From Mytilus californianus (taxonomy: Eukaryota), in assembly GCF_021869535.1 (NCBI RefSeq), contig NW_026262701.1, positions 2,542,001-2,606,000 on the forward strand: a DNA stretch of 64,000 nucleotides, given 5' to 3'. Position 1 is the stretch's first letter. Each line of letters starts with the position of its first letter. Positions 13,501 to 64,000 of the stretch are shown here, piece by piece. The notes under the pieces are model-generated. The model made no database searches. It saw only the letters and a program-made list of their open reading frames with translations, and was not told the origin of the DNA. A program made the translations under genes and the position numbers.

Positions 13501-16500
13501 CATTTGTACCTTCATGACCTTGGGAACAACAAAGCATTCATCTTTTTTTGGAGGAGAGAGTATATATGTGTAGGACTCTGAAATGCGATGGTCACTCTAA
13601 AGTGCGATGGTGTCAAAGGCTACAGTGCGATTATATGACACGCTTAAGTGCGATGCCGATGGTATGACACAAGAGTGCGATAGTATAACACGCTAAAGTG
13701 CGATGGTTGGTATGACACAAGAGTACGATAGTATAACACGCTACAGTGCGATGATGTAACGAAAATGGGGTTCAGACAATGGTTTTCGTTTAAATTCGTT
13801 GCAGTGTTCCTATTTATAGTGTATTTTTTTTGTTTATTATTATGTTTATTAATCAAGCCGATGTCTTTCTCTTTTGATTGTTTTTACACTGGTCATTGCC
13901 CTATATAGCTGGCTATGCGGCGTGGACCAAGGCTCCAAGTTAAAGGCCGTACAGTTATTAGTTGCATATATCAAAGACATTTGGTCTTGGGTGGATATTT
14001 GTGTCATTTTTTATTTAAAGTACGATAGTTGTCAAAAAAGTGTAATGGTTACATTGCAGTAGCTAGTATATACTGTCTCAAGCCAGGAACCTGTAATTCA
14101 GTGGTAGTCGTATGTTGCTGTATTTCATATTTATTTTCCGTTTATTGTTTTGAATATAGATCAGGTTTCACACTGGTTGTTTTGTGGCCCTTTGGTCCAT
14201 ATAGAATACTATGTCACAGTATGTGGTGTTAGCCAATGCTCCGCTTTAAAGGCCATGCGATAACCTATAGTAGCTTGCATTAATAACATTTGGTCTAGGA
14301 TGGAGAGTTGTCTCATTAGCAATTATACTATGATACTACACCTCTGGTAGTTCGGTTACTGTCTAGTTGACGTTTTATTGAATGATTCCGTCAGAATGTA
14401 AAAAAGTAGACTTTATTTCACGCAAGTTCATAACATGGGTATTCAAACATAGAAGGAGCTGCTAAATTAAATTTAAATTCAACATCCAAGTGAGCAATCT
14501 CCAGAATCTCTTTTTCCTCTTTAGTTAAATTACATTTTGCAACCTTAACATAAATAGTAGAAATACTAAAAAATTTTCAGTATAAATGATCAAATGGTCA
14601 TGCGTATGATCGTCCTGCATATGCATGTGATATTTGCCACTATACGTTCAACAAGCAAAAATTAGTTTACATTACTTTATTAATTTATTTGACCGAACTA
14701 CTGGAAAAAATGATTTTCAAAGTGTTTCATACACAGCGTCACTTTTACGGTAATCCTTTATCATTTTTGTTGATTTCCATTGTTATCGGGAAAACAAACT
14801 TAAGTGTATTGAGGCATCGGACTTTAGCGTCTTCCATTTAATAGCACAGACCATTGCACTTTAGCGTATCAAACCATCACACTTTAGCGTAGACCCTCGC
14901 ACTTTAGCGTGACCATCGCGTTTTAGCGTCCCCATCGCACTTTAGAGTCCTACAAATGAATAAAAGAAATGAATGGAACAGCAACCCAATGACAAAAATT
15001 AACAAAAGAAATCTATAAGGATATCATATACAGTAGTCATCAACACAAGTCTAGATATGATACAAACCACAGTAATTAATCACTAAAATTGAGTATGGAA
15101 ACAGGGAATACATGTATTAAAAAAAATAGTAAATTCCCAGGATAAATTTTCGGTAAATGTAGTTTTAATATCATGAAACTTAATACACATGTTCATTATG
15201 ATGAGAACTTTTTAACTTAAATACCAAATTATTTTTGACCCCAATGTCATGGATCAATTAACAAGGAAAATGATAGTGCAAGCAGGGCATGGTGTCAATG
15301 GACAAATATTCTTGTTATACCTCTGTGAGTCTGTGAGCATGGTTTAAGACAGATTACAATGTACATAAGTATTACTCTAGAACCAACCTAGTTTGAACAT
15401 GACAAATAAGCTAGTAATTTTGTTATATTATGTTATAGATGGACAGTGTTCATACAAAGGCAGATCTTATCAGACTGGTCAAAAGTGGCTAGATGGCTGT
15501 GATTATGAATGTGTTTGTCAGGATGGAAACACTGGAAAATATAAGTGTACAAACAGGTGTGTATGAACAGATAGAAAATGGCAGGATGGTTATTAGTGTA
15601 CAAACAGGTGTGTATGAACAAATAGAAAATGGCAGGATGGTTATTAGTGTAAAAACAGGTGTGTATGAACAAATAGAAAATGGCAGGATGGTTACTATTT
15701 TACAAACAGGTGTACATGAACAAATAGAAAATAGCAGGATGGTTACTATTGTACAAACAGGTGTGTATGAACAAATAGAAAATGGCAGGATGGTTACTAG
15801 TGTACAAACAGGTGTATATGAACAAATAGAAAATGGCAGGATGGTTACTAGTGTACAAACAGGTGTATATGAACAAATAGAAAATGCCAGGATGGTTACT
15901 AGTGTACAAACAGGTGTATATGAACAAATAGAAAATGGCAGGATGGTTACTATTGTACAAACAGGTGTGTATGAACAAATAGAAAATGGCAGGATGGTTA
16001 CTATTGTACAAACAGGTGTGTATGAACAAATAGAAAATGGCAGGATGGTTACTATTGTACAAACAGGTCTGTATGAACAAATAGAAAATGGCAGGATGGT
16101 TACTAGTGTACAAATAGGTGTGTATGAACAAACAGAAAATGGCAAGATGGTTACTGTTGTACAAATAGGTATGTATGATTTACAGATAGAAAATGACAGG
16201 ATGGTTACTATTGTACAAACAGGTGTGTATGAACAGATATAAAATGACAGGATGGTTACTAGTGTACAAACAGGTGTGTGTGAACAAATAGAAAATGGCA
16301 GGATGGTTACTAGTGAACAAATAGGTGTGTATGAACAAATAGGAAATGGCAGGATGGTTACTAGTGTACAAATAGGTGTATATGAACAAATAGAAAATAG
16401 CAGGATGGTTACTAGTGTACAAATAGGTGTGTATTGAACAAATGGAAAATGGCAGGATGGTTACTAGTGTACAAATAGGTCTGTATGAACAGATAAAATA

Positions 16501-19500
16501 TGACAGGATGGCTACTAGTGTACAAATAGGTGTGTATGAACAAACAGAAAATGGCAGGATGGTTACTAGTGTACAAATAGGTGTGTATGAACAAACAGAA
16601 AATGGCAGGATGGTTACTAGTGTACAAATAGGTGTGTATGAACAAATAGAAAATGACAGGATGGTTACTATTGTACAAATAGGTGTGTATGAACAGATAG
16701 AAAATGGCAGGATGGTTACTAGTGTACAAAAAGGTGTGTATGAACAGATAGAAAATGGCAGGATGGTTACTATTGTACAAACAGCTGTGTATGAACAAAT
16801 AGAAAATGGCAGGATGGTTACTAGTGTACAAATAGGTGTGTATGAACAGATAGAAAATGACAGGATGGTTATTAGTGTACAAACAGGTGTGTATGAACAA
16901 ATAAAATGGCAGGATGGTTACTACTGTACAAACAGGTGTGTATGAACAAATAGAAAATGGCAGGATGGTTACTATTGTAAAACTAGGTGTGTATGAACAA
17001 ACAGAAAATGGCAGGATGGTTACTATTGTACAAATAGGTGTGTTTGAACAAATAGAAAATGGCAGGATGGTTACTAGTGTACATGTACAAATAGGTGTGT
17101 ATAAACAAACAGAAAATGGCAGGATGGTTACTATTGTACAAATAGGTGTGTATGAACAGATAGAAAATGGCAGGATGGTTACTATTGTAAAACTAGGTGT
17201 GTATGAACAAACAGAAAATGGCAGGATGGTTACTATTGTACAAATAGGTGTGTTTGAACAAATAGAAAATGGCAGGATGGTTACTAGTGTTTGACATGCA
17301 TCTAGGACAGCAGATATGTTAACTGAAATTCAGCAAGATCTTACAATTACAAAAATGTTGTTTGTTGTAGAATTGATTCTTGTTCATTTACATGTACATT
17401 GTATGTTAGCCTTATTGAGACAAGTTCAAATGGTATTCTTATTATCAGCATTGTTGGAATAAAGGAGGATATTTATTATTTTTTTGGTTGAAATCTTAAA
17501 GGTTGATCACTGAACTAATATTTAAAACTTAACTGAGGAGAAATATTGTATAACACAAGATACAGTGGTTGAATTTGTTTCTCGAATGAATGATGACGAT
17601 ATGTTGGCTAATTTTAATGATTTGCAAAAAGATTGTGTTCTTTGTGATGTCATCAGTCATAGTTGGCTTTTGTGTGATGTCACAATTAAGAAATCCAGGA
17701 AGCGCAAGGACATTTTATGTTATAATTAAATTTTGACCAAAAAAGAGCTGAGATCCAGTGATTACATATATATAATAAAAAAACATTAACCATTCAGGGA
17801 AAGTATATATCTGCTTATTATAAGAATTAAAGAAAAATAAGTTATTATACATGGTATATGATGAAAGGCTACCAACATAAAATTCATTTTGAATAAAATA
17901 TATGGTATTGACCTGGCATTAGTTATTAACTACACTTACTGTCATTTGCTATGCAGAATTTATACTTTCCATGCTAAATGCAACTCAGAATTTTAAAGCC
18001 AATTTCTACATGTATGTTCAAAGATGTATTCGATTCACTTAGATACTATAAAGATCTGACCATATGCTTATTCATTAATGTCTTTCTTTGTATTTATTTA
18101 TAAAACAGTTTCTTTCTCTTTATTTAGGGAATATTTGGTTGAACTATTTACATTTCATTTGAAAAATTTATGTTTATTCTGTATTTCATATACAATGTAC
18201 ATGTATAGTTATTCTTTATATCATGAATTTCTGCAGTATTATATTGATTTTAAGAGATATGTGTTGCACAATACATGTATATATACTAATAGTCAACAAT
18301 AACTGGAAGATCTCACAGATTTTTTAAACCTTCAAATGAGGTTTTCGTTCTTTTAAATATAATTGAATAGAATGGAAAAACTGAAGTGTTGTTAGTAGAT
18401 ACTTTTCCTTTTTGATGATGCAAAATAATTATGAGGTCATCAAATTTCTTTTTGTGCCTACATTCTTCAAAGTGGAGTCATAGATGAAAAAATAGCCCCA
18501 AACATTGAAATAATTTAAACATTCTAGTGCTGTCTTTTTGGTCTTTTTGTTTGAACTGCAGAAATTGAATAGCTAGAACTTCAAAAAGGAGTTAATGAAG
18601 TTGGTGACCCTATGATCATGATGATCATGATGATTACGGTGTATTTGATAATTTTAGAAGATTTCAAAGTATATATAAAAGATAAATGCTTTTTTTTTCT
18701 AGTTCATAACTTTATAATTTATCATGCTGAGGTTGTATGTAGTCCTAATAAAATCTGACAGCTCCCACTTAATGTGACTTTTACTTAAGCTTACAATAAT
18801 AAACTAATATTAACAATTGCTTCAGGTGTCCGTTATACTATAACTTACCAAAGGACTGCACACTGGTGAAAAAGAATGGTGAATGTTGTCAGCAACCTGT
18901 ATGTAATTTTCATCAAACTATAACTAAAACTGAGAGTACAGGAAAAGGGAGAACAACGAATGGAATAGGTATGTAACTTTCATCAAACTATAAATAAAAC
19001 TGAGAGTACGGGAAAAGGGAGAACAACTAATGGAATAGGTATGTAACTTTCATCAAACTATAAATAAACAGAGTACGGGAAAAGGGAGAACAACTAGTAG
19101 AAAAGGTATGTAACTTTCATCAAACTATAAATAAACTGAGAGTACAGGAAAAGAGGGAGAACAACTAATGGAATAGGTATGTAACTTTCATCATACTATA
19201 AATAAAACTGAGAGAACGGGAAAAGGGAGAACAACTAATGGAATAGGTATGTAACTTTCATCAAACTATAAATAGACTGAGAGTACGGGAAAAGGGAGAA
19301 CAACTAGTAGAAAAGGTATGTAACTTTCATCAAACTATAAATAAACTGAGAGTACAGGAAAAGGAAGAACAACGAATGGAATAGGTATGATATTAACATA
19401 TATGATTTGTGTTTCAGTTTGCTCATCATACAATGACCTTCATCTGTTATGACCAGAAAAAGGAAAAAGTTGGGGGAGCTTGTATTGAATTGGTTGAAAA

Positions 19501-22500: not shown

Positions 22501-25500
22501 AAAATACAATACAGTTATTCCTCAATTTTTCTGATTTTACAGATAAAGATGTTGTCATAAAATTTATAAACTAACAATTATTTTTGATGATAGGCTTTTT
22601 TTGTGAACAGAGCCAGAGAGTTTATTACAAAACTCTTGTAGAAAGTGCTTTGTGGACAATAGATTATCTGCCTTGATTTAACAAATGCAAAAAGCTATTA
22701 TGATATCCAAATATATTCCTTTTTTTTTCAGGTGGTCCACCAGTTGCAGGCAAAAATGGTATGTAAAGGTCAAAACAGGATGCAATTTAAACAGCTCTTG
22801 TTTTTATGCCCTTGCTAGGATAGTAGGAGGCGTTTCATGTCTGTGAATTTATTTGTCTGTCCTTTATCAGATAAAAGTTTTGTTTTCATTGTGAGGTGAT
22901 CTTTTGAATTGATATACTAAATTATGGTTTAACCTGGATTTCACATTTCACTAAACATGGAGATGTGATAGTTTGAGCTGCTCTTGATGTCCAGTGGACA
23001 TATTTATTGTCATTAATTTTGTTCACCTTGGATGAGTCAAAAAGCAAGACATAGGTATGCTGTTTCCTGCTGTGGCATTGTCAACAATGTATTAGTCTGT
23101 GATTAGGTCATTTTATGGGAAACCACTTATGGTAGGTCAATGATATTTTGTATGCAGATATATTAGCATTTGCACATTTCATTTCCATGGAGATTATTTG
23201 GCCCTTTTGTGGTCTTTTGACTTTGGATGATTTGCATAGTTTACATGTTAAAGTTTAAGATTAGATCAGTTTAAGATGAACCACTAATGTTAAGTCAATG
23301 ATATTTGGTTTGCAAGATTGTATGGCCCCCACCCCCTCATCATGGTTCATTGACTTTGAAACTTTTACATTACAAGTTAATATTTGTGTTTAGGTTTGTT
23401 TAAAGGGAAGGACTTATGATAAATCAACGGTATTTGGTATGCAGTTGTATTAGCATTGGCACATCTCATTTCCATGGAGATTGTTTGACCCTGTACATTC
23501 AGAATATTTTGCATAACTTGCATGTTAAAGTATTGTAATTTTAATTTCAACATTTGCATTATCAAAATAACAAAAAGGCAAGATATATCTCTGTGTTAAC
23601 AGTTCATGTTTTTATATATAGTTTCTGTATTTATTTGTAATTCTTTTTCTGTGAATTAAACTATTCACAAACTATCCCCCACACAAGAAAATATGCTTTG
23701 GAGTGAGTATAAAGGCATCTGTAGGACACCACATTAAAACTTATTGCCATGCTTGGGAATATCCACAATGTTTAATATTGCTGCTTTATATAACTAAGAT
23801 GTATATATTCATGCAAGTAGAAATTTTAGAAATAAAAGTACTTTCACTGTACAATGTGACAAACAAAGCCTCATTATAAGGTAAGAAGATGTGGTGTTAA
23901 CAAATTAACTTCTCACATTTTTCAGATACCTGCTTGTACCAAGGAAAGGATTATCGTCAGGGTCAAACATGGGATGTTGGATGTCATACTTATTGTACCT
24001 GTGAAAACGCTGTGTATGGATATTACAGGTGTACAGACATGTAAGTATTGTACGTGTGAGAATGTTGTGTATGGATATTACAGGTGTACAGACATGTAAG
24101 TATTGTACGTGTGAGAATGTTGTGTATGGATATTACAGGTGTACAGACATGTAAGTATTGTACCGTAATCGGGCTTGTATAGTTCGCACTGGTACATAGT
24201 CCGCACCCCCTTCTCACCACGAAATTTCAGGTAAAAAAACTTTTTGTAACTGTTAGAAAAGGTCTAATGAAACTCCGGTAATTTTAAATCGTTTGCGGTA
24301 TTTTCTTGGAAAACCCTATTTTTCATCACCAAACAGAAGCTGAAACTGCTTGTAAAAGTTTTCTAAAACACTTCACGCTGGTTAAAATAAGTCTAAATCA
24401 CACAAAAAACAATTTAGAAACTTGTGTATGTTTAAACCGGAAGTTTGAAAAGCACGTGTAAAAGATGAAAAAACCCGGTGAGAGTCGAAATCCGTATATA
24501 ATAGATATCACTATAATACGACTTTAAAAGTAAAACAGTTCCCTCCTTATGTAAAACAGTGTTTAATATATCTATCAAATTAATGTTTGAAGGGTCTTAA
24601 GCTAATACAAAACATATTTGTCAATAGGAGACACCAAAACGGAACGAATAATAACCGATTACGTTTTGTAGTTTACACATCGTAAGCTGGTTTACGGTTG
24701 TCTTTTTTTACTTTTTTTTACGATTTCATTCAAGCAGATACCAGTTTATATTTAGCAATGCATTGAAAAGAAACAAGAATTTTGTAATGAAGCATTTAAT
24801 TTTTAAATTTATCAGTATTAATTTGATATTGAATAAAAATAACTTATTAATATGGATTGGGTAAAATTATTGGTTTGAAAAATGATAAGAGCGCCCTCTA
24901 CAATGTCAATAACAAACATGGCGGAACGTAAACAAACCACATCGCGAAATTGAAATTTTCTCTCTTATTTCTTGCTTATTGTACTCTATAGTCCGCACCC
25001 CTGCTGTCAGGGTCAATTTTGAAGAATAAAACCGCGGACTATACAAGCCTTTTAACGGTACTTGTGAGAATGATGTGTATGGATATGACAGGTGTACGGA
25101 CATGTAAGTATTGTACTTGTGAGAATGCTGCAGGGGTTAAAAAAATTTGTCACAGCTCACTAGCCCAGGACTTATTGGTAGCAGGATTTTACTAGCCCTG
25201 TTGAAAGAGCTGCTAGCCCATCAAAACTGACCTGCTAGCCCGAGTATACCTTACAAATTTAGAGTGGGTGTCCCTTGTTTTGAATGCGGCATTATACACG
25301 GTATTTGATAAAATAAATCAAATAAATTTTTGTTTTATTAATTATATAACAAGGATCTCTAGACATCTTTTTGGATATCCCTTGTACTATGGGTTGTTAA
25401 ATATATTCGGGCACAGAAAACATGTTCATTGATCTTGTCATGTGAAACCAGTGGTTCAATTCGTATATTTGTTGTTCCCACATACAAGCAGACTTTTTAT

Positions 25501-55500: not shown

Positions 55501-58500
55501 TCCTGGTTTGTGAAAATATTGTCGGTTAACAGTGTTTTAAATTTTTTGTTTTATGATTTACACATTCAAATTCAATGGGAAATATAAATTTAAAAATCTA
55601 GATAAATTGGTACCCCACATATAATCCAGTCAAATTTATAAGTTTTTAGCTTCATGATGGAATTGAGTTATAGGTTACTTTTACTTCATGAAATTGTGAA
55701 ACTATCAAAGAATTTTGAAAGTTTTATTTTTTATTGGGAGAAAATCTTTGAATTGCAAATTTTAGGAAGAGAATGGGAAATAAGGTGTATGAAAATCCAA
55801 TTTCAAGTGGTCCAAAGTCCAAAGACACTGGGAATAATTATAACATCAAACAATAGACCAAATAGATAATGTCGCCTATTCTCATGGTGAAGGCCCTAAT
55901 GTCACCTATTATCATGGTAAAGGCCCTAATGTCACCTATTCTCATGGTAAAGACCCTAATGTCACCTATTCTCATGGTAAAGACGGTAAAGACCCTAATG
56001 TCACCCATTCTCATGGTAAAGACCCTCATGTCACCTATTGTCATGGTAAAGACCCCAATGTCACCTATTATCATGGTAAAGACCCTGATATCACCTATTG
56101 TCATGGTAAAGACCCTAATGTCACCTATTCTCATTGTAAAGACCCTTTTTAGATTATAAAAAGTGATGTTTCACTGCTATGTAATTATATATGTAATTTA
56201 TTGACATGTTTTTCAGAGTCGTGTATGTACAAAGGTGTATCCTATAAGAAGGGAGATAAATGGGAAGATGGATGTCAGTACAAATGTGAATGTATGGATG
56301 ATATGACTGGCAGCTATCAATGCAAAGAAAGGTAACATTTCTGTCTAGTTATAGTCCACACCGTATTTAGTTACTTCCACGTTAATGATGTGCAGTTTGA
56401 ATAGAATTGACGAATCCTTTCTATAATATGATCATACATTGTGCAGACATTTTATTTTTAAATAGTTTGAAATTATAGTCATTTCAAAATATTTTGTTTT
56501 TTATACCCCAGCCTTAAAAAAGTGGGGGTATACTGTTTTACCTCAGTCTGTCCTTCTGTCCATCCATCCCTCCGTCAGTCCGTCCATCCGTCCCATGAAT
56601 ATTTTTCATCGCATTTTTCTCAGAAACTACAATACAAGGATTTCTGAAATTTGGTTTCAGGGTTTATATAAGTTGGCTATACCGTATGATGCATTTTTAG
56701 ATTCATCACTCAACAACTTCCTGAATGAAATATTTGGGTGGTGGTATCATCAGTGAGCAGTAGCTTGCAGTTTCACTTGTTTTTAGTGTGTATGTTTGTT
56801 TTATTTTATGGGATGGAGCTATAGGTTGGGTATAATAAATGTTTTGTGTGTTAAGGCTAGTTCTCTATATGAATAAAGGATATATTACCTCAGAATTGTA
56901 CATAGACACTGATACAACCTTCTGGGGTTTCACAGCGAATGACAAGTTTTTGGCCTCTTGTACTTTCAACATCACCCTTTAAATGGCTTTTGATTAAAAA
57001 AAGAATAAAACACATAAAAAGTCTGTAATGTAAAAACAGTCCTAAGAATAAGATAAAACACATAATTTCCTCCTTTAGGTGAAAAGTCTTACAAATGAAC
57101 TAGCCATTCCTCTCTCAAAATTTGCATATTTTATTAAAGATATAGACCGATTGTTGTTTGCTTTCTTACAAACTTATATGGCAGTAGATACACAATCTAC
57201 CTTAACCCCATATTTGTTAATATTTTATATATAAAAATAAGTAGATGTATGATTGCCAATGAGACATTAACTATCCACTAGAGACCAAATGACTAGGATT
57301 TTAACAACTATAACCAATATTTGACATGCCTTGATAGATTAGTAACACCTGAAGTTGATATAATCAAATCAATGAATATTATCCATAAATGTCCTTTTAA
57401 TGACATTTAGTGTAAAGGGTGTCGGGCTTTTAAAATTGTAAAAGGAACAACAGCACAAAATGCTTAATGAACATCTCATTAATTTTATATTTAAAGTATT
57501 AATATAAACAGTACCATTTTTACTTCACCAGATGCATATTTAGTCAATGTCTCTTCAGTGATGTTGAGTCAATAAAGAGTCATGACAGTTGTATACGCTG
57601 TTCAATAGTCATAATTCGATTAAGCAAAAACATTGGATAATCCAAAACCTAATTCAAGCATTGAAAAGTCAACGAGTGATTTTAAATATGCAATAATATT
57701 ATTTGAAAGATATTGATTCCTTTGAAAAATAAGTTGTTAGTTAACTGTTAGAAATAAAAGACAAATTTGACTGTAAAGTCAGTCTTCAAAAGTGAAAGAA
57801 TTGGTACACATGTATTGTGAAATTAAAAGGCCTATTTATCAAAAACATCAGAAAATCTATATAGTTTTGTTTTATATTAATGTGCCACCTATTTGTTAGT
57901 ATGAATGTGATTTTGAATCTGCATGTACTTTAAATAGAACAAATCAGCATTTAATTCAATAGTCAATTTAAGTAATTCACCACAATGATACATGCATTCT
58001 GTATTACAGGTGTCCAACCTACACAGATATACCAGCCAGCTGTCGACTCACCATTGATCCTAAAGATTCATGTTGTATGGTTCCTTCCTGTGCACAGCCC
58101 ACACCAACACCTGCACCATATTTAGGTCCTAGTACACAAATACCTCCCGTTACAGGTGAGTACTCAGCCATGCTGGACTGACATTAACACTTGCACCATA
58201 TCTAGGTCCTACTACGCAAATACCTCTGATACTGAGCCAACACTGATATATACCTAGGTCTCATTACCCTAATATCTATCTTGACAATTGAGCCACTAGA
58301 TATCTCAAGTTGTAGTTGATTACATACCTACATTGAGCTGTCACCACTTTAAATTTGCACAATATCAAGGTCCTAAGTACTCTGATACCTCTCTATAGAT
58401 TACTCAGCTGCATAAAAAGTTGCAACATATATATATTTTTTTTTTCTAAGCACTTTATATATATATATACAGATATTACTTTTTGAATTATTTCTAGTTG

Positions 58501-61500: not shown

Positions 61501-63701
61501 AGGACATTTCGTGTTAAGCTCCATGTATTAGGTAACCATTATTATACCACTTTTTGTGCTATATTGGTAGACATAGTTCTGGTGTATTTTGGTAAAAAAA
61601 ATGACCAACATTATGTAAATAAGGTGTGATATGATTGCCAATGAGACAACTATTAAACAGAGTCCAAATGACAGGGATCAATTATAAGTCACTATACTGC
61701 TTTCAGCAATGAGCAAAACCCAACCCTTTACAGCTATAATGTACTATACATGCATTAATGACTACTCTATACTTTATAGGTGTAAGTCATACATTTACCA
61801 TCATGTTTATAGTTTATCTTCTCATTGTAGCTGTATGTGTATACAAGGGTAAACAGTACACTCAGGGACAGAAGTGGCAGGATGGTTGTTCATTTGATTG
61901 TGAATGTGTTGATGGTAAAATGGGACAGTTCCAGTGTACAGACAAGTATGTATAATATATTTAAGATACAATACAAGTTTGATGTACTAGTAGATCAACA
62001 GAGTTTATCTTCTGTTTCCCTTTGTTTTGTATTTTGTATTTATCTTTCAAGACAATAGGTTTGTTATAATTCTTAAAACTTTTTGTTTGCATCCTTTGCT
62101 TGTGATTATACATTATCCTTAAAGTAAAGAAACAACTGAACAGAATGACTTCATATTTGGTCAACAGCTTGACAATAATGAGATGTAAAAGAGGGACGAA
62201 AGATACCAGAGGGACAGTCAAACTCATAGATAAAAAAAAACAAACTGACAACGCCATGTAATGTATGAGCACTTTTCAGAACTGTCGGATACTGACTTCC
62301 TGTTTGCCAATACTTTGAATTTTTCAATATGTTGATGAACTTACTGAATTAAATCTAAGGTAAATTCAATTGCAATCATTTACAATTGAACTGTTAAGAC
62401 GGTCAACCTGAAAGCGTGAATACGATTTTTTGCAAGTAGCTTTTTCTGTTTTTACTTCTAGGTGCAAGAGATATCCAAATCTACCACCCACTTGTCAGAT
62501 GGTATACGATTCACAAAATCCTTGTTGTGAGAAACCAGTTTGTGGACTGGTACCAACTGCTGCTCCATACCTGGGTCCATCAACTGTATCCCCTCCATCA
62601 CAGGGGCCAACAACAGCACCTACTGTAGGTTAGTGATAATCCTAGAAAAAGTGTGACTGGAAATGTTAGTTCTTTCCTTTAATGATAAGGTATTACAACC
62701 ACTTCTTTTGAACTTTGGTGGATAGTTGTCTCATTGGCAATCATACCACATCTCCTTATTTTTATATTACTGATTTTCTAGTATTCAACAAAGAATGAGT
62801 TCTCCAAGAGCAATAAAGAACTCCATCAAAGATTTAGGGAACGAAACATAACTGATGATTTTAAAGGATGTTTATTTAATCTGCAACAGACCATATCAAT
62901 GACATGAATGTGAGTAAATACTGAGGAGCAAGATTATGTTCACCATTATTGTAGTAGTATTGTATGTGAGTGTTCATCACTCTGTACCATTTAACATGGA
63001 AAACATTTAAACAAATTCTAACATACTTTAGCAAACCAGGTATCTACCAATTCCTTACCAAAAATACAATTGTATTTGATAAGACAACAATAGACAATAG
63101 AGCCTGCCATTGACTCCATTTCTTTGTCTCTTTTCAGATTTCTGTATATACAATGGTATTTTATACAGACAAGGACAGACATGGCAGTCAGGTTGTGATA
63201 TGACATGTAGATGTGATGATGCTAAATCTGGACTCATTAATTGTAATGAAAGGTACTGAAAAACTGAATTTTTTAATGAATTTTATTCTACATCATATTT
63301 TTAAGTTACCATTCATATAAACAAAACCGTTCAGTTTAGAAAAAAAATGTCAAACAAATTCATGAAGCAACTATAGAAAAAAAATGAAAAATATCTCATG
63401 AGTATACAAAGATTTTATTTTTAAAAAACAATTTTAAACATTTCCATAAATTTTTTGTTGTGCCAATCAGCAGTAGTATCATTGACATATACCCTACATT
63501 TCTTTGCATTCCTTTCCAGATGTCCAATCTACCCAGCACTGCCTTCCAGCTGTACATATGTGACAGATCCAAAAGACCCATGTTGTGAAGTTCCATCATG
63601 TATCAGTCCTAATGCCACTATTCCTACACAGGTTGTCAATGGTACTAAGGGAACTGTATTTATACAGCCACAACTCAACCCTCCAATTATTGGCAAGAGA
63701 G
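1001..63701 (+). CDS. Multi-exon gene model (42 exons, partial at both ends): giant secreted VWA/ShK/VWC-like/Pro-Thr-Gly-Tyr-repeat protein, at least about 3,880 aa
   Basis: All 42 exons have AG acceptors, GT donors (one probable GC) and matching phases (1-1 for VWA/ShK/linker exons, 1-2-1 for VWC pairs), with no in-frame stops in the joined frame. No initiator or signal peptide and no stop codon in the window. Confidence 0.9.
2215..2385 (+). mobile_element. SINE 3' fragment
   Basis: GC-rich core TCTCCGCGCACTCCGGCTTCCTT and 3' end GGCGTTAAAC followed by an (AATC)n tail, resembling mollusc tRNA-SINE tails; family not assigned. Confidence 0.55.
2674..2712 (+). CDS. Exon 2: 39-nt linker microexon (ELPSNPNQLPPPT)
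   Basis: ctttcag|AG...ACAT|gtaagt; phase 1-1 joins VWA1 to VWA2. Confidence 0.8.
3916..4473 (+). CDS. Exon 3: VWA domain 2
   Basis: tttcag|CATGC...ACTG|gtaact; FLVDSSSSVG (intact DxSxS), GDTNT, VVTDG; 558 nt. Confidence 0.95.
4773..4802 (+). CDS. Exon 4: 30-nt linker microexon (VQSTVAPTTA)
   Basis: ttttatag|TT...GCAG|gtaatt; phase 1-1. Confidence 0.75.
6104..6232 (+). CDS. Exon 5: ShK-like domain 1
   Basis: CQNKLNNCNSYGLSVCTQYQPWAKDNCQEYCGFC, 6 Cys ending CxxxCxxC; tttcag| ... |gtaagt. Confidence 0.9.
6375..6752 (-). mobile_element. Abundant interspersed repeat (mussel-type family)
   Basis: Shares GAGAGTTGTCTCATTGGCA-TCATACCACATCTT and upstream blocks with copies at about 11915-12322, 13860-14340, 29545-29630, 34200-34285, 47150-47305, 62700-62765, and in opposite orientation at 57240, 59820, 60890-61200, 61620. 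Confidence 0.8.
6807..6923 (+). CDS. Exon 6: ShK-like domain 2
   Basis: CVDKLTNCFAYGKSSCTQYSEWAHQNCQQYCGFC; ctgcag| ... |gtatgt. Confidence 0.9.
7314..7340 (+). CDS. Exon 7: 27-nt linker microexon (AAAAVTSGF)
   Basis: Poly-T tract, cacag|CT...TTTT|gtaagt; phase 1-1. Confidence 0.75.
7673..10644. mobile_element. Kolobok-like non-autonomous DNA transposon (about 3 kb)
   Basis: Perfect 17-bp TIR AGACCAAACAGCCTATT / AATAGGCTGTTTGGTCT flanked on both sides by TTAA; no transposase ORF seen. Confidence 0.65.
7975..8698. mobile_element. Nested element with subterminal inverted TTTGCGCCGAT motifs
   Basis: Three TTGCGCCGAT copies at about 7979-8047 mirrored by ATCGGAGCAAA/ATCGGCACAAG at about 8638-8683; right end CGTACGCCCCTG; left terminus not identifiable. 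Confidence 0.45.
10699..11836 (+). mobile_element. HINE / Helentron-associated non-autonomous element
   Basis: Subterminal IR GCTCACCT/AGGTGAGC, (GTCC/GTC)n microsatellite near the 5' end, two internal repeats of about 240 bp, 3' hairpin AGGCTCT-TG-AGAGCCT, T-rich insertion site. Confidence 0.8.
11915..12322 (-). mobile_element. Second long copy of the abundant interspersed repeat
   Basis: Collinear with 6375-6752. Confidence 0.8.
13217..13405. mobile_element. Sola2-like MITE
   Basis: Perfect TIR GAGGGGCCTGATGGG / CCCATCAGGCCCCTC, 4-bp TSD ATAT, internal ATCACG motif repeats; GRG termini with a 4-bp TSD fit Sola2. Confidence 0.6.
13569..14954. mobile_element. TGT...ACA TIR element with subterminal motif arrays
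   Basis: TIR TGTAGGACTCT(G/A)AA(A/G)TGCGATGG at both ends; repeated ACGCTAAAGTGCGAT motifs inverted between the arms; flanks TATG/AATG. Confidence 0.65.
15439..15556 (+). CDS. VWC-like module 1, first half
   Basis: YGQCSYKGRSYQTGQKWLDGCDYECVCQDGNTGKYKCTNR; atag| ... AG|gtgtgt. Confidence 0.85.
15544..17290 (+). repeat. 51-bp minisatellite (about 34 copies) built from the exon 3' end plus donor
   Basis: Unit AGTGTACAAACAG|GTGTGTATGAACAAATAGAAAATGGCAGGATGGTTACT; first copy overlaps exon 15439-15556. Confidence 0.95.
18826..18968 (+). CDS. VWC-like module 1, second half plus linker
   Basis: CPLYYNLPKDCTLVKKNGECCQQPVCNFHQ...; ttcag| ... G|gtatgt. Confidence 0.85.
18899..19384 (+). repeat. 70-bp tandem repeat (7 copies) of the last 70 nt of exon 18826-18968
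   Basis: Units start at 18899, 18969, 19039, 19106, 19177, 19247, 19316. Confidence 0.95.
19894..20008 (+). CDS. VWC-like module 2, first half
   Basis: VCVYKGKQYFQRQTWRDGCDQICMCTNSSKGLYQCES; 115 nt. Confidence 0.88.
20027..20805. mobile_element. Non-autonomous TIR element with a 5-bp TSD (ATTAT)
   Basis: TIR CAGTCAGGGGACTTA / TAAGTCCCCTGACTG; ATTAT on both flanks; internal AAGTGATTT motifs. Confidence 0.8.
21042..21181 (+). CDS. VWC-like module 2, second half
   Basis: CPKYNSIPANCHMNTAPGECCQKPACEF...; |gtttgt. Confidence 0.85.
22058..22186 (+). CDS. ShK-like domain 3
   Basis: CVDAVGTCSQYGKDVCTTYSGWAGDNCRKFCNLC; phase 1-1. Confidence 0.9.
22732..22758 (+). CDS. 27-nt linker microexon (GGPPVAGKN)
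   Basis: Poly-T cag|GT...AATG|gtatgt; phase 1-1. Confidence 0.75.
23926..24040 (+). CDS. VWC-like module 3, first half
   Basis: TCLYQGKDYRQGQTWDVGCHTYCTCENAVYGYYRCTD; 115 nt. Confidence 0.88.
24163..25058. mobile_element. Tc2-like (Tc1/mariner superfamily) non-autonomous element
   Basis: Imperfect TIR of about 26 bp CCGT...GGCTTGTATAGT(T/C)CGC, TA TSD; removing it restores a repeat unit exactly. Confidence 0.8.
25131..26236. mobile_element. hAT-like non-autonomous element with a 5-bp TSD (TGCTG)
   Basis: Perfect 14-bp TIR CAGGGGTTAAAAAA; ACTAGCCC subterminal motifs; TSD unambiguous because the target is a known repeat unit. Confidence 0.85.
27108..27358 (+). CDS. VWC-like module 3, second half plus Gly/Thr linker
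   Basis: CPKYNNMPNGCQEVRRNGECCPIMECDSG...; matches ORF 27127..27366. Confidence 0.88.
27842..27956 (+). CDS. VWC-like module 4, first half
   Basis: GCLYKGQLYVQDQAWEDGCDFSCLCTNAVTATYSCRL; 115 nt. Confidence 0.88.
28891..29460. repeat. Degenerate minisatellite of about 60 bp (about 9 copies)
   Basis: Unit about CACAATGAGAAACATTAATCATCTATCCACTTTAACTATGGTACCTAGGGGAGACAACAT. Confidence 0.85.
29655..29935 (+). CDS. VWC-like module 4, second half plus linker
   Basis: CPTYGSIPASCHMETDPNEPCCKAPVC...; |gtaagt. Confidence 0.88.
30310..30424 (+). CDS. VWC-like module 5, first half
   Basis: YCLYKGRRYTQAETWDEGCDFTCVCSDSRTGYYKCVE; 115 nt. Confidence 0.88.
31109..31254 (+). CDS. VWC-like module 5, second half
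   Basis: CVHFGNLPQPYCYLVKDPSNPCCKIPKCEF... Confidence 0.87.
32005..32119 (+). CDS. VWC-like module 6, first half
   Basis: YCEYGGVKYSQGQSWYDGCSYRCTCENALGGVYRCMQR; 115 nt. Confidence 0.88.
32167..32650 (+). mobile_element. tRNA-derived SINE (degenerate, with an internal insertion)
   Basis: A-box-like GTGGTAGAGTG (32186), B-box-like GATTCAAACC (32222), central TGGTATTTGCTGCTTC...AGAGCAAAGACTGGTTGG block, (CAT)n tail. Confidence 0.7.
32909..33189 (+). mobile_element. HINE-type element (second family)
   Basis: Subterminal IR ATGCCCCAC/GTGGGGCAT, (GTTC/GTCC)n microsatellite, T-rich ends; 3'-end fragments also at about 15270 and 40230. Confidence 0.7.
33321..33502 (+). CDS. VWC-like module 6, second half (3' end uncertain: GC donor at 33503 or weak GT donor at 33527)
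   Basis: CPTYQNINPNCKFVPDPNDPSCCQMPQC...; both candidate donors preserve phase 1. Confidence 0.8.
33664..33786. mobile_element. 123-bp MITE with a 5-bp TSD (CATTC)
   Basis: TIR CAGGGGCGGATCCAG / CTAGATCCGCCACTG; CATTC on both flanks. Confidence 0.75.
33943..34057 (+). CDS. VWC-like module 7, first half
   Basis: KCTYKGRQYTQGQKWADGCDFNCECKDASRGYYECTD; 115 nt. Confidence 0.88.
36165..36328 (+). CDS. VWC-like module 7, second half
   Basis: CPRYNDVPPQCKLVTDFTNPCCKKPDC... Confidence 0.87.
36753..36925 (+). mobile_element. HINE-type element, internally deleted (third family)
   Basis: Same 5' (TACCCCC...AAAAAAGTGGGGGTA) and 3' (GGTATCATCAGTGAGCAGTAGCTCGCAGTTTCAC) ends as 56501-56781. Confidence 0.7.
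37399..37513 (+). CDS. VWC-like module 8, first half
   Basis: YCSYRGAKYIQSQTWVDGCTYRCRCDDSSRGVYTCSER; 115 nt. Confidence 0.88.
37556..37943. repeat. Fold-back: two inverted copies of a dispersed repeat
   Basis: Left arm 37556-37752 is reverse-complementary to 37793-37943, apart from an indel of about 50 nt. Confidence 0.85.
38658..38854 (+). CDS. VWC-like module 8, second half
   Basis: CPTYPMSSADCKMVSDPKDPCCLVPQC... Confidence 0.87.
39688..39802 (+). CDS. VWC-like module 9, first half
   Basis: FCLYKSKQYKQGEKWMDGCDYSCECTDASTGKYVCNER; 115 nt. Confidence 0.88.
40403..40575 (+). CDS. VWC-like module 9, second half
   Basis: CTRYTNIPANCFLVKDASNPCCKKPQC... Confidence 0.87.
40639..40843. mobile_element. 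TA-flanked MITE (CTGT(G/A)GATTCAT TIR family)
   Basis: TIR family shared with 42576-42783 and 58562-58693. Confidence 0.7.
42576..42783. mobile_element. TA-flanked MITE (Tc1/mariner-type TSD)
   Basis: CTGTGGATTCATT...AATGAATCCACAG with TA on both flanks. Confidence 0.8.
42953..43067 (+). CDS. VWC-like module 10, first half
   Basis: KCVYRGVAYSQGQQWFDDCSLKCVCEDGPAGLYRCSER; 115 nt. Confidence 0.88.
44660..44898 (+). CDS. VWC-like module 10, second half plus Pro/Thr/Tyr linker
   Basis: CAKYTGLPSTCTLIPDPQDPICCQAPKC...PTPQPYQQPTPYPGYTGPT. Confidence 0.87.
45103..45340. repeat. 41-bp minisatellite (6 copies)
   Basis: Unit TGAATCAGGCTTCCCTTAGCATGCTATACCATATGAAACTG. Confidence 0.92.
45483..45597 (+). 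CDS. VWC-like module 11, first half
   Basis: VCVYKGKQYSQDQKWQDGCDFDCVCQDSKKGLYKCTE; 115 nt. Confidence 0.88.
46645..46778 (+). CDS. VWC-like module 11, second half
   Basis: CPKFVDIPKECTLTRDYQNPCCMKVKC... Confidence 0.87.
47725..47839 (+). CDS. VWC-like module 12, first half
   Basis: QCMYNGVPFNEGQTWNDGCDLRCSCENGTTGYYRCSDR; 115 nt. Confidence 0.88.
48144..48416. mobile_element. Kolobok-like MITE
   Basis: TTAA on both flanks; imperfect TIR GGTGGTACTTAACAC / GTGTTTGGTACAACC. Confidence 0.65.
48445..49856 (+). CDS. VWC-like module 12 second half plus Pro/Thr/Gly/Tyr repeat units 1-10
   Basis: CAKYPNIPSYCTMETDPNDQCCMKPRC then TPGPGYTYPPGKVP... repeats; ttag| ... CCAG|gtaggt; 1412 nt. Confidence 0.92.
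49919..50065 (+). repeat. Degenerate intronic copy (about 141 bp) of the exon end plus donor of 48445-49856
   Basis: Matches 49778-49918, including CAG|GTAGGTACACATATCTACTTAC (second donor at 49997); carries a TGA and a frameshift. Confidence 0.85.
50241..54257 (+). CDS. 4-kb exon: Pro/Thr/Gly/Tyr repeat units 10-38
   Basis: tttcag|GGAGAG...GGAA|gtaggt; 4017 nt open frame (ORF 50339..54286); synonymous sites vary while the peptide motif is conserved. Confidence 0.95.
54774..54916. repeat. Near-complete 143-bp palindrome (MITE-like hairpin)
   Basis: ACTGTGGTTGAAGAATTGCC...TTTTACTG / CAGTAAAA...GGCAACTCTTCGACTACAGT pair along most of their length. Confidence 0.7.
55867..56150. repeat. 30-bp minisatellite (about 9 copies)
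   Basis: Unit TAATGTCACCTATTCTCATGGTAAAGACCC. Confidence 0.92.
56217..56331 (+). CDS. VWC-like module 13, first half
   Basis: SCMYKGVSYKKGDKWEDGCQYKCECMDDMTGSYQCKER; 115 nt. Confidence 0.88.
56501..56781 (+). mobile_element. HINE-type element (third family)
   Basis: TTATACCCC...GTGGGGGTATA 5' end, (GTCC/ATCC)n microsatellite, GGTATCATCAGTGAGCAGTAGC 3' end. Confidence 0.75.
58010..58155 (+). CDS. VWC-like module 13, second half
   Basis: CPTYTDIPASCRLTIDPKDSCCMVPSC...; |gtgagt. Confidence 0.87.
58562..58693. mobile_element. Short copy of the TA-flanked MITE family
   Basis: TA-CTGTGGATT...AATCCACAG-TA. Confidence 0.7.
59317..59446 (+). CDS. VWC-like module 14, first half
   Basis: KPDINACLYKGNVYTQGQKWYDDCDKVCVCQDAKMGFYSCQDR; 130 nt. 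Confidence 0.87.
60528..60721 (+). CDS. VWC-like module 14, second half
   Basis: CAKYSNLGPNCVMVPDSRDPQCCQAPDC...; |gtaagt. Confidence 0.87.
61831..61945 (+). CDS. VWC-like module 15, first half
   Basis: VCVYKGKQYTQGQKWQDGCSFDCECVDGKMGQFQCTD; 115 nt. Confidence 0.88.
62462..62628 (+). CDS. VWC-like module 15, second half
   Basis: CKRYPNLPPTCQMVYDSQNPCCEKPVC... Confidence 0.87.
63138..63252 (+). CDS. VWC-like module 16, first half
   Basis: FCIYNGILYRQGQTWQSGCDMTCRCDDAKSGLINCNER; 115 nt. Confidence 0.88.
63520..63701 (+). CDS. VWC-like module 16, second half
   Basis: CPIYPALPSSCTYVTDPKDPCCEVPSC...; AGAG|gtgagt. Confidence 0.87.
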
Positions 63702-64000
63702 GTGAGTAGTATACAGGGCACTGTATTTATACAGCCACAACTCAACCCTCCAATTATTGGCAAGAGAGGTGAGTAGTATACAGGGCACTGTATTTATACA
63801 GCCACAACTCAACCCACCAATTATTGGCAAGAGAGGTGAGTAGTATACAGGGCACTGTATTTATACAGCCACAACTCAACCCTTCAATTATTGGCAAGAG
63901 AGGTGAGTAGTATACAGGGCACTGTATTTATACAGCCACAACTCAACCCTCCAATTATTGGCAAGAGAGGTGAGTAGTATACAGGGCACTGTATTTATAC
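63649..64000 (+). repeat. 67-bp tandem repeat (at least 5.3 copies, runs off the window) of the exon 3' end plus donor
   Basis: Units at 63649, 63716, 63783, 63850, 63917, 63984; GTGAGT donors at 63702, 63769, 63836, 63903, 63970. Confidence 0.95.

What the first reader, a model, noticed from the sequence alone, without database searches (positions are those of the whole stretch)
15544..64000. Recurrent tandem amplification of exon 3' end plus splice donor at six independent exons
Seen: unrelated arrays with units of 51, 70, 55, about 141, about 80 and 67 bp each begin inside an exon, span its donor and are copied into the downstream intron (exons ending 15556, 18968, 24040, 49856, 58155, 63701). 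I found no equivalent array spanning an acceptor. The copies range from near-perfect (63.7 kb) to decayed (58.2 kb), so the process recurred over time. In the four intact arrays, reading through the first donor hits an in-frame stop within 3 codons (AGG TGT GTA TGA; GGT ATG TAA; ATG TAA; GGT GAG TAG), so only the proximal donor gives full-length protein. Inference: either a mutational mechanism is seeded at 5' splice sites, or selection tolerates only donor-side duplications because the first copy stays functional. The decoy donors could act as an NMD or truncation rheostat.
Basis: partly seen in the sequence, partly recalled or inferred. Interest (0 to 1): 0.8.

Follow-up and report, generated by a model that had tools for sequence, protein, structure and literature searches.

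The report
Splice-donor minisatellites in a mussel gene
One very long mussel gene built of about 50 small exons has, at six (seven counting one just past the window) of its exon ends, tandem copies of the exon tail plus its splice donor; this is real, but it is a known and probably silent repeat type ("mirage" minisatellites) that is common in this genome and also occurs at splice acceptors.

Summary
TRF and a systematic exon-by-exon search find unrelated tandem arrays (51, 70, 55, 140 and 67 bp) whose first unit is the exon tail plus the GT donor at 15556, 18968, 24040, 49856 and 63701. At 58155 there is only one decayed extra copy. No acceptor in the gene (0 of 48) has an array. A seventh donor array lies 18 kb past the window in the same gene.

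The host is a multi-VWC gene of about 50 exons (window 15.4 kb to about 82.4 kb), so it is very rich in splice junctions. The arrays differ in age. The 67-bp array has 16 copies here and one copy in a related sample; the 55-bp array was later split by two mobile elements.

One RNA contig uses the first donor at 18968. Another fits the second copy's donor, which could equally be an allele.

Donor enrichment within the gene is nominally significant (P about 0.001-0.01), but the gene was picked after the fact, and the unseen part of the gene shows no excess. I checked an acceptor-spanning array elsewhere in this genome (WDR7 locus). Nothing supports an NMD rheostat.

The repeat type is published (amphioxus "mirages", human F7/IFI6/CBS). 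This scan has already noted it about 25 times on other DNA of this genome.

The parts
15439..15556 (+). Exon A1 (first half of a VWC domain, phase 1 to 2); donor CAG|GTGTGT at 15556
   Evidence: ORF, Cys pattern and phase; Pfam VWC N-terminal half, E=0.0019. No RNA support: only a 45-nt match from a paralogue.
15544..17290 (+). Array 1: 34 copies of 51 bp (13 nt exon tail + 38 nt intron); GT kept in 33 of 34 copies
   Evidence: The unit is found only here in the 1.65-Gb genome.
18826..18968 (+). Exon B1 (second half of VWC plus linker, phase 2 to 1); donor TAG|GTATGT at 18968
   Evidence: An RNA contig of X14 covers 18824-18965 and joins 18968 to 19894.
18899..19389 (+). Array 2: 7.07 copies of 70 bp. 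The whole unit is the exon's last 70 nt. The array is bounded by GTATG at both ends, consistent with slippage between a coding GTATG and the donor GTATG. GT kept in 7 of 7 copies.
23926..24040 (+). Exon A3 (first half of VWC); donor CAT|GTAAGT at 24040
23991..24163 (+). Array 3, first part: 3.1 copies of 55 bp (50 nt exon + GTAAG)
24164..25061 (.). Dispersed element of about 900 bp with terminal inverted repeats, inserted into array 3
   Evidence: Inverted arms 24160-24187 / 25034-25061. At least 40 scored copies at 94-96% identity on many contigs.
25058..25130 (+). Remnant of array 3 (about 1.3 units) between the two inserted elements
   Evidence: This stretch matches the 55-bp units on either side.
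25131..26236 (.). Second inserted element, with 14-nt perfect terminal inverted repeats (CAGGGGTTAAAAAA)
26237..26579 (+). Array 3, distal part: about 6 more copies of the same 55-bp unit, most with CAT|GTAAGT
48445..49856 (+). Exon B12: second half of VWC followed by a Pro/Tyr-rich coding repeat; donor CAG|GTAGGT at 49856
49776..50065 (+). Array 4: 2.07 copies of 140 bp (81 nt exon + 59 nt intron), 88% alike, decoy donor intact. It sits at the edge of a coding repeat of similar period (129-144 bp).
58010..58155 (+). Exon B13; donor CAG|GTGAGT at 58155
58106..58249 (+). Array 5 (decayed): exon tail plus donor, then one extra copy of about 80 bp whose donor was lost by a 10-bp deletion. A third copy at 58342-58413 is doubtful.
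63520..63701 (+). Exon B16; donor GAG|GTGAGT at 63701
   Evidence: The orthologous exon is 97% identical in two Logan contigs.
63648..64000 (+). Array 6: 67 bp (54 nt exon + 13 nt intron). It continues to 64720 beyond the window, 16 copies, 97-98% alike, GT kept in 16 of 16. A related sample has a single copy.

Best explanation
These are splice-junction minisatellites of the known "mirage" / human F7 intron 7 type.

Inferred mechanism: a short stretch covering an exon tail and its 5' splice site was duplicated in tandem, by replication slippage or unequal exchange. At array 2 the break points are two GTATG pentamers. At array 4 the likely cause is misalignment of the neighbouring coding repeat. 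Unequal exchange then expanded and homogenised the copies.

The duplications are tolerated because the spliceosome keeps using the first, exon-adjacent donor, so the later copies are simply intron. Arrays are born, grow, are hit by transposons and decay, which gives the observed spread of ages.

The gene carries many such arrays mainly because it is packed with junctions (about 50 exons, one per 1.3 kb) in a genome rich in minisatellites. Some extra local proneness cannot be excluded. The donor-only pattern is a feature of this gene, not a rule of the genome.

Shown here: the anatomy, the independence of the arrays, their different ages, the derived state of array 6, and first-donor use at array 2. 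Inferred: the duplication mechanism, and silence of the decoys at the other arrays.
For: - Anatomy and counts.
- Units are unrelated to each other and of local origin.
- Array 6 has 16 copies here but one copy in two Logan contigs, which are collinear from exon A16 to A17. In those contigs the intron continues with exactly the sequence that follows the 16th copy here.
- Array 3 is split by a young element of about 900 bp and by a second inverted-repeat element.
- An RNA contig holding the whole of exon B1 joins 18968 to 19894, which is the first donor.
- Decoy donors carry no more changes than other unit positions; the arrays hold too few changes to reveal selection for or against them.
- Literature: in human F7, LMNB2 and PDGF only the upstream donor is used, and in IFI6 and CBS the first two or three are used (PMC1557585). 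Amphioxus mirages do not disturb splicing and occur at both boundaries (PMC3087553).
- Acceptor and donor arrays verified at other loci of this genome (L025 and L026).
Against: - The donor excess over a uniform seeding model is nominally strong: 5 observed against 0.7-1.4 expected, P between 8e-4 and 9e-3. Tolerance alone cannot create an excess.
- One contig of run X17 joins 19038 to 19894, the donor of the second copy, so the decoys may not be wholly silent.
- Only one of the seven donors has RNA evidence. Exon A1 has none.
- The run type of X17 and the species of the Logan contigs are not on record.
Confidence: 0.72

Rival explanations
1. Exon-intron junctions are preferred seeding sites for tandem duplication in this genome; that is, a mutational bias rather than chance plus tolerance. 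Possible causes (my inference, untested): the junction is a boundary between conserved exon and highly polymorphic intron, where repair synthesis copied from the homologue cannot re-anneal and re-invades; or the junction is a nucleosome boundary prone to breaks. Both donors and acceptors would be affected, and arrays would cluster in genes.
For: - In-gene excess at donors.
- Further junction arrays turned up unasked in the two other loci I fetched: a donor array beside the WDR7 acceptor array, and a second donor array in POLE.
- The scan's notes list several genes with 5-8 junction arrays (unchecked).
- Amphioxus, the other lineage known for mirages, is to my knowledge also extremely polymorphic.
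Against: - All the counts come from loci chosen for the pattern.
- The unseen part of this gene shows 1 array against 0.42 expected, not significant.
- Donors and acceptors pooled give P=0.014 within the gene, before any correction for about 800 windows scanned.
- My rough estimate, from my own approximate gene and intron numbers and not a tool result, is that uniform seeding alone would put a few per cent of all arrays on junctions. That would be more than the scan has flagged.
- Three arrays inspected in the flanks are not at junctions.
Confidence: 0.2
2. The decoy donors are functional. They could act as an NMD or truncation rheostat. Alternatively they could be a field of U1-binding sites that strengthens the true donor or suppresses premature polyadenylation in AT-rich introns.
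For: - GT is kept in nearly all copies (33/34, 7/7, 16/16).
- Every decoy would introduce a stop codon.
- One contig end fits the second donor of array 2.
Against: - GT retention is what young, homogenised arrays show at every position.
- In the oldest array the decoy donor is deleted.
- Array 6 is absent from a related sample, so it is not a conserved part of the gene.
- The two differences between copy 1 and copy 2 in the 41 letters at issue are synonymous. An unequal-exchange allele therefore explains the X17 contig equally well.
- In published cases the decoys are silent or constitutively minor (PMC1557585, PMC3087553).
Confidence: 0.05
3. The arrays are assembly artefacts: spurious tandem expansion in a long-read assembly.
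For: None found. No DNA reads were laid on the arrays.
Against: - The copies differ from one another in a structured way: 91% identity over 34 copies, and subfamilies with CAG and TAG donors.
- Transposons sit inside array 3.
- The same repeat type recurs at many loci.
Confidence: 0.02

Closest known systems
Amphioxus "mirage" minisatellites (Adh3, globin genes BflGb6 and BflGb9)
   Same: Tandem repeats whose unit spans an exon-intron boundary. Units are tens to about 160 bp. Many copies keep the AG/GT signals. Copy number is unstable, and regular splicing is undisturbed (PMC3087553).
   Different: In amphioxus both 5' and 3' boundaries are reported, one or two per gene. Here there are seven, all on donors, in one gene, in a mollusc. 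My literature searches found no report of the type in Mytilus.
Human F7 intron 7 VNTR, and the IFI6 (6-16), CBS, LMNB2 and PDGF donor minisatellites
   Same: The first monomer spans the exon-intron boundary, so identical pseudo 5' splice sites follow the true one. The most upstream site is used, or in IFI6 and CBS the first two or three (PMC1557585).
   Different: In the human genes there is one array per gene, with a demonstrated splicing outcome and population polymorphism. Here RNA evidence exists for one array only.
Intron gain or sliding by tandem duplication of an AGGT-containing segment
   Same: In array 2 the unit is wholly exon-derived, and the array is bounded by two GTATG sites, one in the coding sequence (Val-Cys) and one at the donor.
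   Different: No new intron is created, and the ancestral donor is still the one used. I did not test whether the intron position is ancestral.

Membership tests
Mirage / splice-junction minisatellite | Head-to-tail tandem array with a unit of minisatellite size (about 10-160 bp) | tested here: met
   Units of 51, 70, 55, 140 and 67 bp (and 65/58 bp outside the window), with 2 to 34 copies.
Mirage / splice-junction minisatellite | The unit contains an exon end (or start) together with its splice signal, and the terminal copy is the real junction | tested here: met
   The first unit overlaps a phase-consistent exon and its GT at all of them. The junction is RNA-proven only at 18968; the others rest on exon homology and phase.
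Mirage / splice-junction minisatellite | Copy number is unstable between haplotypes, individuals or species | tested here: met
   Array 6 has 16 copies here and 1 copy in two Logan contigs from other samples. The other arrays were not tested.
Mirage / splice-junction minisatellite | Regular splicing is not disturbed (only the authentic copy is used) | tested here: inconclusive
   The X14 contig uses the first donor. The X17 contig end fits copy 2 (decoy or allele). There is no RNA on the other arrays.
F7-type donor VNTR | Pseudo 5' splice sites identical in sequence to the authentic one | tested here: met
   Array 6: the first eight donor 9-mers, including the authentic one, are identical (GAGGTGAGT). 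Arrays 1-4: many or all 9-mers are identical to the authentic donor.
VWC-domain protein (host gene) | Pfam VWC (PF00093) match over the full domain | tested here: inconclusive
   The fused exon L005:8427-8708 matches profile positions 1-56 of 57 at E=3.9e-5 and 24.3 bits, just under the 27.6-bit cut-off. Half-domain exons match the N-terminal half at E=0.002. About 26 such modules were found by Cys pattern.

The most novel reading that the evidence does not exclude
Minisatellites in this mussel (and in amphioxus) are preferentially born at exon-intron junctions and cluster in particular genes, through a junction-linked mutational process. One candidate is repair synthesis that starts in the conserved exon and stalls or re-invades at the border with highly polymorphic intron. 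Under this reading the seven donor arrays of this gene would be a hotspot, not chance.
Probability: 0.2. Interest if true: 0.7.

Novelty: new member of a known kind. Interest (0 to 1): 0.3.

Why it matters
Taken alone, this is one more natural example of many identical decoy 5' splice sites behind a true one. Up to 33 sit behind a single donor, in seven arrays within one gene. That could serve as a test bed for how the first donor is chosen.

Its wider value depends on a question left open here: whether splice junctions really attract tandem duplication in highly polymorphic genomes. If they do, that would bear on how minisatellites arise, on intron and exon-end evolution, and on coding change. 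At array 6 the exonic copy shares a Val-to-Ile change with the internal copies, so array turnover can rewrite the exon tail. Such arrays can also mislead gene annotation in mollusc genomes.

Tried and rejected
1. Random genome sample. I planned 1.4 Mb in 10-kb pieces for an unbiased count of junction arrays.

2. Annotation-free test. I compared stop-free runs abutting array ends with runs at random positions. The null is too high (P of a run of 50 or more codons is 0.15-0.18), so the test has no power. Three flank arrays with long runs, inspected by eye, are not at junctions.

3. Naming the gene from the giant Pro/Tyr exon. The search found only a 919-aa uncharacterised M. galloprovincialis protein at 51% identity, and its locus is not on record.

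4. Orthologous contigs for other arrays. The exon B1 peptide found no candidate. The window's own ORFs across A1 and B16 are not on record.

5. Intron origin at 49857-50240. I asked whether this intron derives from the coding repeat. Only the duplicated exon tail inside it matches, so the idea was dropped.

6. Inheritance of arrays by exon duplication. The units share only chance 9-13-nt matches, so this was rejected.

7. Spliced gene model. 
Full report
WHAT IS THERE

The window is G000:C121:2542001-2606000 of a 1.65-Gb assembly. Earlier notes of this scan call it the California mussel. I did not verify the species. GC is about 32%.

On the + strand, from 15.4 kb onward, lies one very long gene made of alternating small exons.
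- "A" exons encode the first half of a von Willebrand factor type C (VWC) domain. They enter in phase 1 and leave in phase 2.
- "B" exons encode the second half plus a Pro-rich linker. They enter in phase 2 and leave in phase 1.

Domain evidence:
- A exons match the N-terminal half of Pfam VWC (E about 0.002).
- One fused A+B exon matches the whole domain (E=3.9e-5).
- Two giant exons (48445-49856 and about 50241-54240) carry a Pro/Tyr-rich coding repeat.

With 100 kb fetched on each side, the gene continues to about 82.4 kb in window coordinates. It ends with two weakly ShK-like exons. I count about 48-51 exons in 67 kb, or one exon per 1.3 kb.

THE ARRAYS

TRF and direct reading confirm the following.

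| Array | Span (window coordinates) | Unit and copies | Exon + intron share of unit | Decoy GT kept |
|---|---|---|---|---|
| 1 | 15544-17290 | 51 bp x 34 | 13 + 38 nt | 33/34 |
| 2 | 18899-19389 | 70 bp x 7.07 | 70 + 0 nt | 7/7 |
| 3 | 23991-24163, resuming 25058-25130 and 26237-26579 | 55 bp, about 10 copies in all | 50 nt + GTAAG | 6/8 |
| 4 | 49776-50065 | 140 bp x 2.07, 88% alike | 81 + 59 nt | 2/2 |
| 5 | 58106-58249 | about 80 bp, one decayed extra copy | about 50 + 30 nt | 0/1 |
| 6 | 63648-64720 (runs off the window) | 67 bp x 16, 97-98% alike | 54 + 13 nt | 16/16 |

- Array 2: the unit is exactly the exon's last 70 nt, and the array is bounded by GTATG on both sides. This is what slippage between a coding GTATG and the donor GTATG would leave.
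- Array 3: it is split by a dispersed inverted-repeat element of about 900 bp, which has at least 40 copies at 94-96% identity elsewhere. It is split again by a second inverted-repeat element.
- Array 4: it lies at the edge of a coding repeat of similar period.
- Array 5: the extra copy is 57/79 identical and lost its GT through a 10-bp deletion. A third copy is doubtful. TRF does not call this array.

A seventh array of the same build lies outside the window at 82313-83643 (L006:8313-9643). It has 65/58-bp units in about 21 copies, on the end of the second ShK-like exon.

The units share no similarity with one another. The 51-bp unit occurs only in its own array in the whole genome. The arrays therefore arose locally and independently.

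Such stops are unremarkable in AT-rich introns and within donor consensus sequences.

MORE THAN CHANCE?

I blasted exon tail plus donor against the downstream intron for 48 exons. This gave strong hits (50 bits or more) at exactly the six claimed exons. Acceptor plus exon start against the upstream intron gave none. The wrong-side controls gave only 24-28-bit noise.

| Null model | Expected donor-spanning arrays | Observed | P |
|---|---|---|---|
| Random placement of the 16 non-coding arrays | 1.4 | 5 | 0.009 |
| Seed model (unit length x donors / gene length) | 0.70 | 5 | 8e-4 |
| Seed model, donors and acceptors pooled | 1.4 | 5 | 0.014 |

Random placement expects 1.45 acceptor-spanning arrays. 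Zero observed gives P=0.21, so the lack of acceptor arrays is not significant in itself.

Two cautions apply.
- The window was picked because of this pattern, out of about 800 windows noted in this genome.

A planned unbiased sample of the chromosome could not be fetched. An annotation-free substitute had no power.

AGE AND TURNOVER

A peptide search with exon B16 led to two Logan contigs from other samples, L027 and L028. L028 is collinear with the window from exon A16 through B16 to A17, at 81-84% identity. It contains exactly one copy of the 67-bp unit. Its intron then continues with the sequence that here follows the 16th copy.

Array 6 is therefore a derived, young expansion. Short-read contigs could in principle collapse a repeat, but an unbranched path through the junction argues for a single copy.

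The exonic first copy shares a derived A (Val to Ile) with the internal copies, while the last copy keeps the ancestral G. Homogenisation has therefore reached into the coding sequence.

Array 3 predates two transposon insertions, and array 5 is nearly erased.

RNA

Only one call of the reads tool was available, and I used it on 15400-21300.
- An RNA contig of run X14 contains the whole of exon B1. It joins 18968 to 19894 and then 20008 to 21042. This confirms the exon model there and use of the first donor of array 2.
- A contig of run X17 matches the next two exons perfectly. Its run type is not on record, and its species label is that of the best holders of this stretch. It joins 19038 to 19894, the donor of the second copy, but only 41 letters lie left of the joint.
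- Copies 1 and 2 differ there at two synonymous positions. An allele produced by unequal exchange explains the X17 joint as well as decoy use does.
- No reads lay on array 1. Exon A1 was touched only by a paralogue's transcript.

The regulatory idea therefore has no positive support.

DONOR-ONLY?

Within this gene, yes: 7 donor arrays and 0 acceptor arrays. Within the genome, no.

Following a note of this scan, I fetched the WDR7 locus (L025).
- It holds a 48-bp x 6.1 array, each unit ending in ...TTACAG plus the exon start.
- The array is followed by an open exon that runs to a GTAAGT donor.
- The preceding exon's end plus donor is also duplicated (58 bp x 2.2), so both ends of one intron carry arrays.

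At the POLE locus (L026, minus strand) there are two donor arrays at neighbouring exons, 62 bp x 37 and 25 bp x 32.

The scan's notes list about 25 "mirage" findings in this genome, several with 5-8 arrays in one gene. I did not check those. The scan has thus found this before on other DNA, and this gene is one of several array-rich, exon-dense genes.

KNOWN KIND

Tandem repeats that span exon-intron boundaries were named "mirages" in amphioxus. There both 5' and 3' boundaries are duplicated, copy number is unstable, splicing is undisturbed and the mechanism is unknown (PMC3087553).

Human F7, IFI6, CBS, LMNB2 and PDGF carry donor minisatellites. In these the most upstream site, or the first two or three, is used (PMC1557585).

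The arrays here meet the defining features that I could test. My literature searches found no report of the type in Mytilus.

MECHANISM AND VERDICT

Most likely (0.72): these are ordinary minisatellite births by slippage or unequal exchange that happened to span a donor. They are tolerated because the first donor stays in use, and they then expand and decay. They are numerous here because the gene is dense in junctions and the genome is rich in minisatellites.

A junction-linked mutational bias remains possible (0.2) and is the interesting open question. A regulatory role for the decoys is unlikely (0.05), and an assembly artefact is very unlikely (0.02).

The finding is real, is a new member of a known kind, and is of modest interest.

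Noticed in passing
L006:8313-9643 (window coordinates 82313-83643, outside the window): A seventh donor-spanning array in the same gene. It has 65-bp units changing to 58-bp units, about 21 copies, built from the end of a ShK-like exon (…CNLCPKPSVPSVQVT) and its CAA|GTATGT donor.
   Followed up: partly
L025:3009-3133 and L025:4258-4549: At the WDR7 locus, one intron carries a donor-spanning array (58 bp x 2.2) at its 5' end and an acceptor-spanning array (48 bp x 6.1) at its 3' end. A third, purely intronic array (58 bp x 6.2) lies between them.
   Followed up: partly
L026:4197-6489 and L026:8305-9101 (minus strand): At the POLE locus, two neighbouring exons each have a donor-spanning array (62 bp x 37 and 25 bp x 32). 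This is another case of junction arrays clustering in one gene.
   Followed up: partly
window 63648-63701 compared with L027/L028: The exonic first copy of the 67-bp array shares a derived base (Val to Ile, PPIIGKR against PPVIGKR in the related sample) with the internal copies. The last copy keeps the ancestral base. Array homogenisation has therefore changed the coding sequence.
   Followed up: partly
window 24164-25061: A young dispersed element of about 900 bp with 28-nt imperfect terminal inverted repeats. It has at least 40 scored copies at 94-96% identity on many contigs (1478 first-look candidates).
   Followed up: partly
window 20019-20805: An intronic stretch with high depth in all four runs laid (contig depth 40-170, plus raw RNA reads on both strands) and many variant letters. 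It is probably an expressed repeat family, not part of the gene's mRNA.
   Followed up: no
L005:8425-8709 (window coordinates 72425-72709): One VWC module has its two halves fused in a single exon, with no A/B intron. This suggests intron loss in one of about 26 modules.
   Followed up: no
window 13593-13760 and 14850-14949: Two short arrays of 19-23-bp units that are reverse complements of each other (CACGCTAAAGTGCGATG… / ACCATCGCACTTTAGCGTG), about 1.1 kb apart, just upstream of the first VWC exon. This looks like a mobile element with subterminal inverted repeat arrays.
   Followed up: no
window 55867-56146: A 30-bp x 9 array, 70 bp upstream of the acceptor of exon A13. Its unit contains a donor-like CATG|GTAAAG. 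It spans no junction of the present exon model.
   Followed up: no
extended coordinates 75610-76102, 83819-84480, 86753-87197 and 91992-92445: Four arrays with a period of 163-166 bp and about 3 copies each, in and beyond the 3' part of the gene. The shared period suggests a satellite, perhaps carried by a mobile element.
   Followed up: no
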